Assembly (NCBI GenBank): GCA_038087875.1
Contig: CM075977.1
Coordinates: 18,166,001 to 18,230,000, forward strand
Origin: Malacoraja senta
Lineage: Eukaryota
DNA: 64,000 nt
Direction: 5' to 3'
This document shows positions 10,524-34,165 of this stretch, one piece after another. The position numbers and the translations under genes were made by a program. The first letter of the stretch is position 1; each line of letters starts with the position of its first letter. The notes under the pieces were generated by a model, which made no database searches, had not been told where the DNA came from, and worked only from the letters and a program-made list of their open reading frames with translations.

Positions 10524-10703
10524 AACAACTTAAGTGCTGGTTAATTAAACCTTTCCAAAATAATTAAACTTTATTACAACACTTCATTTGAAATAGATCA
10601 TCTAATTCCCCAAAAGCTGAAATATCGAAAACACAACCAGTTTAAAACAAATTTCAATAACTTTTAAATGCTAAATACAAAATAGTAAAAAATAGATTCT
10701 TAC

Positions 10704-10715
10704 CACTTTGTCTTC
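10704..10715 (-). CDS. RIMS2: 12-nt in-frame microexon (GAA GAC AAA GTG = EDKV) of the RIMS gene
   Basis: Minus strand reads ...tttcctgcctgctaccttgctcttcatgctttcttggattccAG|GAAGACAAAGTG|GTaaga. Phase 0/0 fits the upstream exon. EDKV is the insert found in RIM1 between RSNN and VMWVC. Confidence 0.85.
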
Positions 10716-10775
10716 CTGGAATCCAAGAAAGCATGAAGAGCAAGGTAGCAGGCAGGAAACAAAATTGAAAAATAA
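10716..10775 (-). promoter_or_regulatory. Polypyrimidine tract with four UGC motifs upstream of the microexon (SRRM3/SRRM4-type intronic enhancer)
   Basis: ccTGCcTGCtacctTGCtcttcaTGCtttcttggattccag, all within about 40 nt of the acceptor. Confidence 0.6.
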
Positions 10776-11249
10776 AGTATTATTTATTCAAGTGTGGAAG
10801 TGTAGCAAGATATTTCAGAATAATACGTGACAACATTTAAAGGACATAAAATACTGAGGTGCAAGCAAAACTCTAAAGGTAATATTCATAAAGGAAATTC
10901 GAGGTTTAATGAACAACAGAATATAACTGCCAAACATTAAAATTCAGGAAAATTATTACAAATAAAAGTAGTAATTTATGCATTACATGTTTCATAATTC
11001 ACTTTTTGGGAAACAGAAATCCATGTAAAATGTGTTTAAATAACAAATTGCCATTAATTTAGTTTTACAAAATTCAAAGATGTACAGAAAATTTAATTAA
11101 GGATCATCAATGTTGTACAAAACTAAATGAATTTTTTAAAAAGTGATGTTCGAAATTTGCAATAAAAACAGAAAATGCTAGAAATTCTTAGCAGGTAAAT
11201 ATCTTGAAGTTGAAGGGAAGTTGACTGGAATGTTAGATCACATAGAAAC

Positions 11250-19812: not shown

Positions 19813-21669
19813 AGAAGAAGGGAAGGAAATGCCTGGCAGGTAATACAGCAGGTATCACAGAGAGGGCTCAGTGAGAGAGGGTCTCACAGAATTCCTGTCG
19901 GAGAGAGGAGGAGAACTTTTCCAAAGTAGGCATATCTTGAGGAGATTTTGCAGTGAAATGTACAAAAAAGGAACTGCGGATGCTGGTTTATAATAGAGAT
20001 ACAAGGTGCTAGAGTAACTTTGAATGCCTTTGTCCTGCTGCTCCTCACTTCCAGCTTTCTTCCCCTGCCCCTCCACCCCTCGCCGCCCCCCCTCCCCCCC
20101 CCCCACCACCACAAATAAGTCTGCAGATGAGTCCTGACCCAAATTTTCACCTATCCATGTTCTTTAGGGATGCTCTCTGACTTTGTCTTCTTTTGTAAAA
20201 CAGCATCTGCAGTTCCTTGGTTCCATTTTTCCATGTTTTCTGGATGCGCATTATGATTGTTTTGCTTTGTACTCTATTCCTCCATTTATCAAACCAGGAT
20301 CCCCAATCTTTTTTTAACTGCCTATTCAACCTGCTCTGTCACTTTCAATAATATATGTGCACACATTCTCTGATCTCTCTGTTCATGTATTCCATTTAGA
20401 ATCGTGACCTGTCATATTGTTTTTGTCACTCTTCGTATTGAAATCTACTATATGTGCACTTCATCTAATATTTTGCATACTAATACTGAAATGTAGTTAT
20501 TTCCCCACCAACAAGGTTAAACTGAATGGTATCCAGTTACCAATTTAAATTTACAGATTTAAATTTATGGATTTAAATTAAGATTGTGACTAAAATACAA
20601 GGAAAGTGGATTAGAGTCCTTACAGGAAGTAGGGCAAAAGAAGAAGGATGGACATGATAGCTGCAAGAATCCATGGGCTTGTCGTGGATATTGGTTGCTA
20701 ACATTCTCTGAAAGAGAGAATTCTGGAAAGAGAAGGGAAGGGAAAAGTGTGGAGATTATGCAGCTGCAAGTGAGAGGAGCAGCAGCAAAATTATAATGGA
20801 AATTAAAGATGAAGAGGGCAGCTTCTGTGCTGTTGAAATAGGAAATGTTTTACATATCCCACAGAGTCAATGAAAGCATTAATTTTAAATCTTATTTAGC
20901 CCAGAGCAGTCAAGACGCCACTGAATAGTGGGAGAGACCAGAACTTAGCAAAATAGATGTTCTTCATGGATGTTGTTAATATGCAATTCCAAAAGACATT
21001 TGATGCATTTCTTCACAAGTCCTGCCAGCTCAAGTCCATTGAAATTAAGTCATATTATTTTCCCAGGAAGGAAACTGGCTGAGCAGCAGGAAATAGAGAG
21101 TAGAGCTTTTTATAAGTACTTCAATTGGCAGCATATCACTCGTCAGTGTTGGGGCCGCAACCCCATATTTTAAAGACGGCGTTGATGGAAAAGGCTTGTA
21201 TCCAGATTTGCTGATTGCTGTCATTGCAGTGTAAACAGTACACATGGAATCCATATATTGTAGAGATATTCAATGCATTGTGTGAATTAAGGTACATGGA
21301 ATTAGAGGATATGGGGTTAGAGGGATATGGTCCAAATGCAGGCAAACAGGACAAACGTGGATTGGACATATTGCGTGGTGTGGGCAAGTTGGGCCAAAGG
21401 GCTTGTTTCCATAATGTATGACTCTATGACTCTCTAACTGTGCAAACGTATTTCAAGGTGGGCAAATTGGAGTACAATACTGAATCTGAAAAGAAGGCAA
21501 TAGTCTACTCTCTAAATGGTGCATGGTAGTATTAGCTGAGGTCCAACAAGACTAAGATGTATGTTAGCATTAAAATGTTAAAGTGGATGGCATAGAACTG
21601 GTGTGTCCAGTTGATGATGGTTGGTATAGACTTGTTGGATCAATGGGCTTGTTTCTAGGCTGTATCTCT

Positions 21670-24381: not shown

Positions 24382-25340
24382 TTACACAGAACTTAAAATA
24401 GTTTCTGCAAACAACCCCGCATTAACAATAGGCCGATGGTAAAAATGTTGAAACATCAACTCATTGGACCACCCGGCGGCTGCGAGGATATGGTCGACGG
24501 GGCCGTCTTTTGCCCTGGCCGCCGACATTTCTGCTGCCCTAGTCGAGTGAGACGTAAAAACATAAATGTTAATACCAGCAGCTGTTAAGACTTCTTTTAT
24601 CCATCTGGAAATAGTCTGTATTGAAACTCTCTTGTGTGGTTTCTTGTGTGTGATCAAAAACCCAGTTTCCGTATTCTCAAATTCTTTGTGACCTCAATGT
24701 ATTGTAATAAATATGTCTTAATACAAAGACATGGATCATTTGGATATGCTGCCAGCATAATTTTAAATCCTGTCACACCTGGCCTAATTTGCTTTATTAG
24801 GTCATAGATATAGAATGTAACCTTGTCTTCAGTTACTTCCATACTATCTATTTGTAATTTTCCAAGTGTTTGCACTCGTTGTGCTGTCACTCATGCCATA
24901 AACATGAATACTTTCATACTGAGCTTGACCAAAGGTAAAGACACACTTGATAACCATCACGAAGTAGTTTCAGTACCACACTTACATCCCAGATTGTCAC
25001 GTACCTAGGTTTCGGTGGTTTGGAATTAAAGATTCCTTTCATTAGTCTGGAAACAATTGGGTGTGACCCAATTGAGTTTCTTTCTGAATCCAGAACCAAA
25101 TATGAGCTGAATTAATTACACTATAACTCAGACCTTCATCATAATAAAGTTTTGACAGAAATTCTAAACATTTGAAATATCTGCAGTACTTTATTGCACA
25201 TTCTTTTGTACCCAGAACTTTTCCCATTTCTTAATATAAGAAAGGTACTGTTTTTGAGTGCTCTTCCTCCAGGCTGCTGTAAGCATGTCCACAGTATGCT
25301 CAGACAGTCCTCGTCCCAGAAAAGGCATTCTTAAAACCTG
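24382..25340 (-). pseudogene. DIRS tyrosine recombinase, frameshifted
   Basis: ORF pieces GLSYSVINSA, IGSHPIVSRLMKGIFNSKPPKPRY..WDV, TAQRVQTL, TISRWIKEVL..AGI..FTSHSTRAA, ILAAAGWSNE..F..FY. The upstream boundary is approximate. Confidence 0.88.
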
Positions 25341-31817: not shown

Positions 31818-32496
31818 GGTCTCACCGATGTATAGCAGCTGACACCTAGAGCAGCGGATGCAACAGATGAGGTTGGAGGTGGTGCAGGTGAACGTCTGCC
31901 GCACCTGGAAAGACTGCGTTGGTCCTTGGAAGGAGTCAAGGGGGGAGGTAAAGCATCAAGTGTAGCATTTCCTGCGGTTGCAAGGGAAAGTACCCGGGGA
32001 GGGGGTGGTTTGGGTGGGAAGGGACGGATTGACCAAGGAGTTACGGAGGGAGCGGTCTCTGCGGTGTCTTCCAACATGGTTGTTCTTAAGATCAAGTCAC
32101 TGTTAAAGTGTTGAGTACAGAGATCATTTATACAATTTACCATACTGATATAGGGTTTTCCTTGACAGGCAGAATTATTGTTGAACCAAAAAAATGGGAA
32201 TGTGAACATCACACTCAATTTACTAGTTCACATCCTTGTTGGGGGAGGTTCAATCTCAGAAATTCAGGATTATGAATAGTACGTTGAAATATACAGCTCT
32301 AAATGTTTTCATACAGAATTGAGAACAAAATGATCCAAAACTGGAAAATTTCAATCTGGAAATAAATGTAAATTAAAATTAGAACTGAGGATAAATATTC
32401 AACAGAGAAGGATGTTGATCGTGAAGGATGGTGAGTTTAAAGTAGTCACAATCAGCAATCCAAATATCAGTTATCCATTCATCACTGTCAACGTAC

Positions 32497-32707
32497 CTTG
32501 TTTGATCGCAGTGACACCCTCCCTCCACACCGAGCACAGAATTTTGTTTGGCAATATGAACAGATGTGGCCACAGCCATCGGCAAACTTGGTTTTGTGAC
32601 AGATTCCACAGGTAGGTGCATCACTCTTCTGTTCCTCCTGTTGCTGTGCTTCATCACCCATCTTCTTTACCTGATCTTTATACATCTCAAACTGCTGGTG
32701 CAATTTC
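32497..32707 (-). CDS. RIMS2: RIMS2 (RIM2-alpha) internal coding exon: end of Rab3-binding helix plus N-terminal part of the zinc finger
   Basis: Translates (G)-KLHQQFEMYKDQVKKMGDEAQQQEEQKSDAPTCGICHKTKFADGCGHICSYCQTKFCARCGGRVSLRSNK, 211 bp. Acceptor ttttgtccttctgccacctgcAG and donor AAG|GTACGT. FEMYK..VKKMG, YCQTK and RSNK match RIM2 as I recall it, rather than RIM1 (FESYK..VRKIG, YCRTK, RSNN). Confidence 0.93.
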
Positions 32708-34165
32708 CTGCAGGTGGCAGAAGGACAAAATAAGTCATTTTGTACAAAGGAAATTAAATGGCATTTATCTGTATTTACAGCTCGCTTCTTATCTCCCCAG
32801 CTGCTTCCAGGAAGTTAGAGTGTTTCATAAGGCCCCATTTGCTGTCAGCCAAGTCTTAACACAACAGCACCAGAACAGCTCACATGCTTCCCATCAAAAA
32901 AATGACAAGGATCCCGTCAGGCTTGTGAGTCAGACAGAATTTAATAACTATTAAGTGTCAGTTCGATTTGAAATTCTTCACAAATGTGCCGTGGCCTTAG
33001 TTATTGCAACATTTCTCTGAACAGCAAAACAATTTATGTGCATAAGGGAATACCAAGGGACAAATAAAATGTAAACCTGTCTTGCCTTCATCTGATAACC
33101 TAAAATAATCTATTCTCTATTGCTTCACCCGTTAAGTTTGCAGAAAATACAGTGCTTGACATATACAGCTGGACATACCAGGGTGAACGTAAGCAAAATT
33201 ATTCTGCTTTCCAAAATGCTTTATTGCCCATAACACCTCAGCAGTGATGTTGTTGCCATTACCAATGATTTCAAAACAGTGCTTTCAAAATGTTAATTAA
33301 ACAGTCAACTTCTCATTATGAAGATGATGAGAATAAGGAGTTCATTCTGCTAGAGAAATACACAAAAAGCTGGAGTAACTCAGCAGGTCAGGCAGCATCT
33401 CTGTAGAAAAAGGATAGGTGACATTTCTGGTTGGGACCCTTCTTCTGTCTGATTGTAGTCGAGAGAGTGTGGGAAAGAAACTGGAAGCAAAGATACAAAA
33501 GAACAAATCAGGGCAGGCAACAGAAGACCTCAGCAAGGAGGTCCATGCTAGGCTGACTGGTGGCTCAGGACAGGTGTGCGCCCAAGATGAATACATCTCT
33601 ATCCCAGTCTGAATTGCAAGAGGGATTAATTCTGCCAGGTTTTGTAAAAAAAAAAACTGGGTTCATCCAGACTTGCTTCACTCAAAAATCTTCAGCTAAA
33701 CAACTGCAGCTTGTTAAAATGTGTTGCAAATGTAATCTTTTATATTGTAGGTTCAATGAACTGCAGATGCTGGTTTAGAAAACAAGACACAAAATGTTGG
33801 AGTAACTTAGCAGGTCAGGCAGCATCTCTGGTGAACATGATGACATTTTGGTTGGAATCCTTCTTCAGACTGATCGTCGTGTGGGCGGTGAGGGGAAGAA
33901 AGCTGGAAGAGAGGAGGGCCTGATAAGTGATAGGTGGATACATGTGAGGGGGTTATGATAAGAAGATGGCCAGAGATGAAATACAAAAAGTGTGAGATAA
34001 GAAAAGATGTGAATTGGAGGAAGGAATATCGGTGGAAGGAGAGAAATAGGGGCGTCCAGGTGGGGCATATGGAATGGGGGGGGGGGGGGGGGGGTTGCAA
34101 AAAGGGAATTGTTTTTAGGTTAGTCATATAAAATTGAAGAAATCAATGTTCATACATATATCAGT

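What the first reader, a model, noticed from the sequence alone, without database searches (positions are those of the whole stretch)
10704..10775. Hidden 12-nt neural-type microexon (EDKV) inside the RIM2 zinc finger
It lies 21.8 kb downstream of the zinc-finger exon and is invisible to the ORF track. It has CAG/GTAAGA splice sites, preserves frame, and has four UGC motifs in the polypyrimidine tract, the known signature of SRRM3/4-regulated microexons. Inclusion gives RSNK-EDKV-(VMWVC), the four residues I recall from RIM1, whereas the common RIM2 form reads RSNKVMWVC. This suggests the microexon predates the RIMS1/RIMS2 duplication and could tune the Munc13-binding zinc finger. Gene annotation may well omit it.
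Basis: partly seen in the sequence, partly recalled or inferred. Interest (0 to 1): 0.75.

Follow-up and report, generated by a model that had tools for sequence, protein, structure and literature searches.

The report
Conserved RIMS2 zinc-finger EDKV microexon
The 12-base segment is a genuine mini-exon of the synaptic gene RIMS2 that adds four amino acids (EDKV) to its zinc finger, but the same mini-exon is already annotated in RIMS1 and RIMS2 of many vertebrates, so the find is correct and ordinary.

Summary
On the minus strand, GAAGACAAAGTG (10704-10715) has a ttccAG acceptor, a GTAAGA donor and four UGC motifs at -39 to -18. It lies 21,781 nt downstream of a RIMS2-type zinc-finger exon (32497-32707) that ends RSNK in phase 0.

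It is not a chance match:
- It is the only one of 94 stop-free AG-N12-GT candidates in the intron that encodes EDKV (chance about 3e-4).
- A 1,747-nt RNA contig from a close relative joins the zinc-finger exon directly to GAAGACAAAGTG and then to GTGATGTGGGTGTGTAAC (VMWVCN).
- Part of the exon region's sampled 31-mers (31-54%) is held in runs of seven other organisms.
- The exon and its immediate flanks align with the rat RIMS2 locus, where it sits 21.3 kb after the zinc-finger exon.

It is not new. All 119 best RIMS2 database isoforms (gar, tarpon, sturgeon, paddlefish, bichir, birds, a marsupial) read RSNKEDKVVMWVC. RIMS1 reads RSNNEDKVVMWVC and a lamprey RIM reads RSSKEDKVVIWVC, so the exon predates the paralogues.

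The insert sits at the tip of the β3-β4 hairpin, which helps form the crevice for the Munc13-1 C-terminal helix. SRRM3/4 control, neural specificity and any effect on Munc13 binding are inferred, not tested.

The parts
10704..10715 (-). 12-nt microexon GAAGACAAAGTG, coding EDKV in phase 0-0
   Evidence: Sequence. It is the only EDKV-coding AG-N12-GT candidate in the intron. The same 12 letters lie between the zinc-finger exon and VMWVCN in an RNA contig of a close relative. It aligns with the rat RIMS2 and toothfish RIMS1 microexons.
10716..10760 (-). 3' splice site (ttccAG) with a pyrimidine-rich tract holding four UGC motifs at -39, -35, -27 and -18
   Evidence: Four or more TGC in 45 nt occurs upstream of only 0.5% of AGs in the window. 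The stretch GCTTTCtTGGAT is shared with the rat RIMS2 flank.
10718..10853 (-). AG-free zone upstream of the acceptor (nearest upstream AG is 138 nt away), suggesting a distant branch point
10698..10703 (-). 5' splice site GTG|GTAAGA. Its downstream flank (GTaAGAaTCTaTTT) is conserved with rat.
32497..32707 (-). RIMS2 zinc-finger exon (KLHQQFEMYKDQVKK...CARCGGRVSLRSNK), the exon spliced to the microexon
   Evidence: It is 89-93% identical to the closest RIMS2 zinc-finger sequences in the database. RNA contigs of relatives end exactly at its borders.

Best explanation
This is the cartilaginous-fish copy of an ancient 12-nt exon found in the alpha-RIM genes RIMS1 and RIMS2. It is alternative in other vertebrates.

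The exon is spliced between the zinc-finger exon ending RSNK and the exon beginning VMWVCNLC. This turns ...RVSLRSNK-VMWVC... into ...RVSLRSNK-EDKV-VMWVC....

The four residues lengthen the turn of the C-terminal β3-β4 hairpin of the zinc finger. That hairpin, together with helix a2, forms the crevice that holds the C-terminal helix of the Munc13-1 N-terminal fragment.

Shown here:
- exon anatomy
- orthology
- inclusion in mRNA of a close relative
- conservation of the exon and its flanks
- position in the fold

Inferred:
- Inclusion is enhanced in neurons and endocrine cells by SRRM3/4 acting on the UGC motifs next to the pyrimidine tract.
- The longer hairpin modulates RIM-Munc13 binding, and perhaps Rab3 binding, without abolishing it.
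For: Anatomy and chance statistics.

Transcript: run X4 holds a 1,747-nt contig at depth 38 that lies on 32496-32708 with 5 differences. Its loose end, reverse-complemented, reads AAGACAAAGTGGTGATGTGGGTGTGTAACT. The joined sequence is therefore RSNK|EDKV|VMWVCN.

Conservation:
- 31-54% of the sampled 31-mers of 10630-10800 are held in runs of seven other organisms, including organism B, which supplied the transcript.
- In Rattus rattus RIMS2 the exon GAGGACAAAGTG lies 21.3 kb after the zinc-finger exon, with alignable flanks.
- A Dissostichus RIMS1 locus has the same exon.

Proteins:
- 119 of 119 top RIMS2 isoforms read RSNKEDKVVMWVC.
- RIMS1 reads RSNNEDKVVMWVC, lamprey reads RSSKEDKVVIWVC, and duck and rat partial RIMS2 models read RSNKEDKV followed by intron.

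Structure:
- Rat RIM2 zinc finger (2A20/2CJS) aligns with a 4-residue gap exactly between K129 and V130.
- The AF2 model has strands at 74-79 and 87-92, with RSNKEDK as the turn.
- Lu et al. 2006 describe the β3-β4 hairpin plus helix a2 as the crevice for the Munc13-1 C-terminal helix (PMC1472246).
Against: - No RNA of the window's own species was laid on the sequence. The transcript comes from a relative that is about 98% identical in the zinc-finger exon.
- Tissue, alternative versus constitutive use, and SRRM3/4 dependence were not tested.
- The Srrm4-dependent Rims2 exons listed by Nakano et al. 2012 are exon 12 (48 nt) and exon 18, not this one.
- The rat flank keeps only one of the four UGC motifs in the aligned position.
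- No binding data exist for the +EDKV zinc finger in the papers I could search.
Confidence: 0.9

Rival explanations
1. It is a chance pseudo-exon: an intronic 12-mer that happens to have AG/GT flanks and is never spliced in.
For: About 94 stop-free AG-N12-GT candidates, and about 800 of length 3-27 nt, exist in this intron by chance. No RNA of the same species was examined.
Against: - It encodes exactly the EDKV of RIMS1/RIMS2 isoforms (chance about 3e-4).
- A relative's transcript includes it.
- The exon and flanks are conserved in seven other organisms and in rat.
Confidence: 0.01
2. It is a real exon but not an SRRM3/4-type neural microexon. It is either constitutive in RIMS2-alpha mRNAs of cartilaginous fishes or controlled by other factors such as PTBP, RBFOX or NOVA.
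For: - The relative's contig runs through the exon without a break, so inclusion is the dominant form in that run.
- All 119 best-scoring RIMS2 isoforms, from gar, sturgeon, birds and a marsupial among others, carry it, though the query itself carried EDKV.
- Published Srrm4-dependent Rims2 exons are other exons.
- A 138-nt AG-free zone and a U/C-rich tract also fit PTBP-type control.
Against: - The four-UGC signature is rare in this window (0.5%).
- The exon is 12 nt, with conserved flanks and a good donor, which is the usual architecture of SRRM3/4 microexons (established knowledge; Raj et al. 2014, cited from memory).
- Forms without the exon exist: rat RIM2 cDNA in 2A20, and several RIMS2-like proteins reading RSNKVMWVC.
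Confidence: 0.25
3. The insert is functionally neutral at the protein level: a tolerated loop extension with no effect on Munc13 or Rab3 binding.
For: - It lies in a hairpin turn with lower model confidence than the strands.
Against: - The peptide EDKV is identical in both paralogues, from lamprey to mammals.
- Purifying selection on the coding letters and flanks over more than 450 million years argues for a function.
- The hairpin itself moves on Munc13 binding.
Confidence: 0.3

Closest known systems
EDKV alternative exon of vertebrate RIMS2, as in RefSeq isoforms such as Megalops cyprinoides XP_036394287.1 and the Lepisosteus, Acipenser, Polyodon, Polypterus, bird and Sminthopsis isoforms
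   Same: - Same gene and same intron, directly after the zinc-finger exon ending RSNK.
- Same 12-nt length and phase.
- Same peptide EDKV, followed by VMWVCNLC.
- In rat the exon lies at nearly the same distance: 21.3 kb against 21.8 kb.
   Different: Only species and synonymous letters differ (GAA versus GAG). The donor is GTAAGA here and GTTAGA in rat. This copy has four UGC motifs upstream against one in rat.
EDKV insert of RIMS1 (RSNN-EDKV-VMWVC), e.g. Fukomys, Cavia, Camelus and Megalops RIMS1 and a Scyliorhinus torazame RIMS1-like model
   Same: Same position in the zinc finger, same four residues and same phase. A toothfish RIMS1 locus has GAGGACAAAGTG with AG/GT sites.
   Different: It is the paralogous gene. 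The preceding exon ends RSNN (RSNT in toothfish) rather than RSNK, and the intron is much shorter in the teleost (2.6 kb).
SRRM3/SRRM4 (eMIC)-dependent neural microexons
   Same: Length of 3-27 nt, frame-preserving, UGC motifs within 40 nt of the 3' splice site beside a pyrimidine tract, conserved intronic flanks, and a host gene in the synaptic vesicle release machinery (Rims2 is named among genes with nSR100-regulated microexons in PMC4387716).
   Different: Dependence on SRRM3/4 and neural restriction are not shown for this exon. The Rims2 exons listed as Srrm4-dependent in PMC3464207 are others.
Rat RIM2-alpha zinc finger structures 2A20 (NMR) and 2CJS (complex with Munc13-1 3-150)
   Same: Same domain. 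The solved sequence matches the region across the whole zinc finger.
   Different: The solved form lacks EDKV. The alignment has a 4-residue gap between K129 and V130, so the +EDKV hairpin has no solved structure in the copy searched.

Membership tests
Orthologue of the RIMS1/RIMS2 zinc-finger EDKV microexon | Lies in the intron directly after the zinc-finger exon that ends ...CGGRVSLRSN(K/N) in phase 0 | tested here: met
   The zinc-finger exon 32497-32707 ends AAC AAG|gtacgt, and the candidate lies 21,781 nt downstream on the same strand. The rat RIMS2 exon sits 21.3 kb downstream.
Orthologue of the RIMS1/RIMS2 zinc-finger EDKV microexon | 12 nt coding E-D-K-V, with AG and GT splice sites | tested here: met
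   ccag|GAAGACAAAGTG|gtaaga. Rat has GAGGACAAAGTG and toothfish RIMS1 has GAGGACAAAGTG.
Orthologue of the RIMS1/RIMS2 zinc-finger EDKV microexon | Found in mature mRNA between the zinc-finger exon and the VMWVCNLC exon | tested here: met
   Met in a close relative only. The contig of run X4 reads RSNK-EDKV-VMWVCN across both junctions. No RNA run of the window's own organism was listed as holding either stretch.
Orthologue of the RIMS1/RIMS2 zinc-finger EDKV microexon | Host gene is RIMS2 rather than RIMS1 | tested here: met
   The exon translation is 89-93% identical to the closest RIMS2 zinc fingers and about 80% identical to RIMS1. It has RSNK and KLHQQFEMYK as in RIMS2.
SRRM3/4-dependent neural microexon | Length 3-27 nt and frame-preserving | tested here: met
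   12 nt, phase 0-0.
SRRM3/4-dependent neural microexon | UGC-containing enhancer close to the 3' splice site, next to the pyrimidine tract | tested here: met
   TGC at -39, -35, -27 and -18. Only 0.5% of AG-upstream stretches in the window have four or more.
SRRM3/4-dependent neural microexon | Inclusion restricted to, or enriched in, neural or endocrine tissue | not testable with these tools
SRRM3/4-dependent neural microexon | Inclusion falls when SRRM3/4 is lost | not tested
   There are no data for this exon. The Rims2 exons listed in bronx waltzer (Srrm4 mutant) mice are exon 12 and exon 18.

The most novel reading that the evidence does not exclude
The EDKV extension of the β3-β4 hairpin is a regulated switch, conserved since before the lamprey-gnathostome split. 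It would change how the alpha-RIM zinc finger grips the C-terminal helix of the Munc13-1 N-terminal fragment, and so shift the Munc13 homodimer-to-RIM heterodimer balance and vesicle priming. This has gone unnoticed because the only solved zinc-finger structures (2A20, 2CJS) are of the form without EDKV.
Probability: 0.3. Interest if true: 0.55.

Novelty: already known. Interest (0 to 1): 0.2.

Why it matters
For genome annotation, it confirms that a 12-nt exon invisible to ORF-based methods is real in a cartilaginous fish. It also dates the exon to before the RIMS1/RIMS2 split, because the same peptide occurs in lamprey, in both gnathostome paralogues, and in sharks through mammals.

For synapse biology, the point is modest but concrete. 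The insert sits in the hairpin that helps hold the Munc13-1 C-terminal helix. The only solved structures of the RIM zinc finger (2A20, 2CJS) are of the minus-EDKV form. No paper in the searchable library reports any assay of the plus form. The exon itself is already present in many public gene models, so the finding adds an orthologue and not a new kind of element.

Tried and rejected
- **Next exon.** I looked for VMWVC, WVCN and CRKQ in all six frames of the window and found nothing. The second junction could therefore be read only from the RNA contig.
- **Other EDKV 12-mers.** The ones at 20179 and 24819 have no splice sites and were rejected.
- **Shark and duck loci.** The look-up of encoding contigs returned no DNA for the Scyliorhinus RIMS1 model, whose range is too long, and no record for the duck model. 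Nucleotide comparison was therefore limited to rat RIMS2 and toothfish RIMS1.
- **Literature.** Searches for RIMS1/RIMS2 with 'microexon', for RIM zinc finger with microexon and Munc13, and for the peptides EDKVVMW, NEDKVV, KEDKVV and SNKEDKV found no description of this exon.
- **Srrm4 papers.** PMC4387716 has no supplement held as text. The supplement of PMC3464207 lists other Rims2 exons.
- **Cartilaginous-fish annotation.** I ran no further search on annotated RIMS2 isoforms of cartilaginous fishes. No query at hand would rank them into the 120 rows shown, and the answer would not change the verdict.
- **Runs X1, X6 and X7.** They gave only short contigs that stop inside or at the 5' border of the zinc-finger exon, so they say nothing about the microexon.

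Full report
**What is in the sequence**

On the minus strand the window reads ...tttcctgcctgctaccttgctcttcatgctttcttggattccag|GAAGACAAAGTG|gtaagaatct....
- The 12-nt segment occupies 10704-10715.
- The acceptor AG is at 10717-10716 and the donor GTAAGA at 10703-10698.
- It codes E-D-K-V.

The upstream coding exon is at 32497-32707 on the same strand.
- It translates, from 32706, to KLHQQFEMYKDQVKKMGDEAQQQEEQKSDAPTCGICHKTKFADGCGHICSYCQTKFCARCGGRVSLRSNK.
- It ends AAC AAG|gtacgt in phase 0, so a 12-nt exon keeps the frame.
- The two exons are 21,781 nt apart.
- The following exon (VMWVCNLC...) is not in the window, so the whole intron is longer than 32.5 kb.

**Is it more than chance?**

- The part of the intron held in the window contains 94 stop-free AG-N12-GT candidates, and about 800 for all lengths of 3-27 nt.
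- Only one other candidate has at least 70% pyrimidines in the 40 nt upstream. Only this one codes EDKV.
- From base composition, the chance that any of the 94 codes EDKV is about 3e-4.
- Two further EDKV-coding 12-mers on this strand lack splice sites.
- TGC occurs at -39, -35, -27 and -18. Four or more TGC in 45 nt is found upstream of only 0.5% of the AG dinucleotides in the window.
- No AG occurs for 138 nt upstream of the acceptor.

**Which gene**

- The exon translation is 89-93% identical to the closest RIMS2 zinc-finger sequences in the database and about 80% identical to RIMS1. It carries the RIMS2 hallmarks KLHQQFEMYK and RSNK.
I did not test that note.

**Is the exon used?**

I laid Logan contigs of four runs on 32200-33000. 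Run X4 (organism B) gave the decisive result.
- It holds a 1,747-nt contig, at word depth 38, that lies on 32496-32708. That span is the zinc-finger exon plus one coincidental letter on each side. It shows 5 differences.
- The contig continues on both sides with letters that are not in the stretch laid.
- The loose end on the 3' side of the transcript is AGTTACACACCCACATCACCACTTTGTCTT on the plus strand.
- Reverse-complemented and joined to the exon, this reads CGA TCA AAC AAG GAA GAC AAA GTG GTG ATG TGG GTG TGT AAC, or R S N K E D K V V M W V C N.

It occurs in a spliced transcript of a close relative (about 98% identical in the exon).

A contig that stops at both exon borders and carries the next exon cannot be genomic DNA. 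Because the contig runs through without a branch, the including form is the main one in that run. Contigs drop rare variants, so skipping is not excluded. The other three runs gave only short contigs that do not reach the 3' border.

**Conservation**

- The 171 nt around the exon (10630-10800) share 31-54% of their sampled 31-mers with runs of seven other organisms, including organism B. All of these words are held in the two runs that are probably the source of the assembly.
- A Gnomon model of Rattus rattus RIMS2-like reads RSNKEDKV and then runs into the intron.
- In the rat locus, accag|GAGGACAAAGTG|gttaga lies 21.3 kb after the zinc-finger exon, nearly the same spacing as here.
- Aligned with the window, the immediate flanks are recognisably the same: GCTTTC(T/G)TGGAT upstream and GT(A/T)AGA(A/G)TCT(A/T)TTT downstream. 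Intronic sequence is not expected to stay alignable over such a distance without constraint.
- A Dissostichus RIMS1 locus has ctgcag|GAGGACAAAGTG|gtgagt 2.6 kb after its zinc-finger exon.

**Already annotated elsewhere**

- A search with a tarpon RIMS2 isoform listed 120 best proteins. They are RIMS2 isoforms of tarpon, gar, sturgeon, paddlefish, bichir, many birds and a marsupial.
- All 119 newly fetched ones read RCGGRVSLRSNKEDKVVMWVC. The query itself contains EDKV, so the including forms rank first.
- Forms without the insert also exist: several RIMS2-like proteins read RSNKVMWVC, as does the rat RIM2 sequence of the solved structures.
- RIMS1 occurs both as RSNNEDKVVMWVC (Fukomys, Cavia, Camelus, Megalops cyprinoides) and as RSNNVMWVC (Megalops atlanticus and others).
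- A Scyliorhinus torazame RIMS1-like model reads RSNNEDKV plus intron.
- A lamprey 'RIMS1-like isoform X10' reads RSSKEDKVVIWVC.

A tunicate RIM (Phallusia) has a different four-residue insert at the same site, KSSK-NERM-AMWVC. That could mean an older origin, but I did not pursue it.

**Where the insert sits in the protein**

- The rat RIM2-alpha zinc finger of 2A20/2CJS aligns over its whole length with a four-residue gap between K129 and V130. The numbering follows K97/K99/R118 of Lu et al. 2006.
- An AlphaFold2 model of the gar sequence with EDKV has strands at GGRVSL and VVMWVC, with RSNKEDK as the connecting turn. The alignment held 22 sequences, and pLDDT was 85-95 over the zinc finger and 77 in the block holding the insert. 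The insert therefore lengthens the tip of the C-terminal β3-β4 hairpin.
- According to Lu et al. [quoted passage not shown] K97, K99 and R118 on the opposite side bind the C2A domain.
- The idea that EDKV could tune Munc13 binding is thus structurally reasonable, but nothing I could read tests it. No paper in the searchable library prints the +EDKV peptide or discusses this exon.

**Regulation**

The architecture is that of SRRM3/4-dependent microexons (established knowledge, cited from memory):
- a 12-nt exon,
- UGC motifs beside a pyrimidine tract within 40 nt of the acceptor,
- a good donor,
- conserved flanks,
- a host gene in the vesicle release machinery.

Rims2 is named among genes with nSR100-regulated microexons (PMC4387716). 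However, the Srrm4-dependent Rims2 exons actually listed by Nakano et al. 2012 are exon 12 (48 nt) and exon 18, not this one. Only one of the four UGC motifs is in the aligned position in rat. SRRM3/4 control and neural restriction therefore remain inferences. I give them roughly three chances in four.

**Verdict**

The exon is not a new kind of thing, nor unknown to annotation in general: it is the orthologue of a widely annotated vertebrate exon. Interest is low. The one open and testable point is what the conserved EDKV hairpin extension does to RIM-Munc13 binding.

Noticed in passing
window 32707-32710 and beyond (upstream exon junction): The zinc-finger exon is joined to different upstream sequences in two relatives. 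Run X1 gives ...GAAGAGAAGGAACAGTCCATGCTCAG|G (EEKEQSMLR-KLH, the usual Rab3-binding helix exon). Run X4 gives ...CCTTATGCACTTGCAACTG|G, an unrelated sequence. This suggests an alternative 5' exon or promoter feeding into the zinc-finger exon.
   Followed up: no
window 32636-32710, run X1: A 126-nt contig carries nearly the same about 21 letters (AGCATGGACTGTTCCTTCTCT) as loose ends on both sides of the first 75 nt of the zinc-finger exon. This suggests a cyclic path in the assembly graph or a template-switch artefact. The break is inside the exon, so it does not look like a canonical back-splice.
   Followed up: no
window 10718-10853 (- strand): A 138-nt AG-free zone precedes the microexon acceptor, implying a distant branch point. 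Candidate yUnAy sites lie at -61 and -22.
   Followed up: partly
protein P0148 (Phallusia mammillata ZF(Rab)-2): A tunicate RIM-like protein has a different four-residue insert at exactly the same hairpin position (KSSK-NERM-AMWVC). It may be a homologous microexon older than vertebrates, or it may be convergent.
   Followed up: no
L001 18364-39697 versus window 32497-10715: The distance from the zinc-finger exon to the microexon is almost the same in rat RIMS2 (21.3 kb) and in this genome (21.8 kb), despite the large evolutionary distance.
   Followed up: no
One of the two chance EDKV 12-mers (24819-24830) lies within it. I did not check the element.
   Followed up: no
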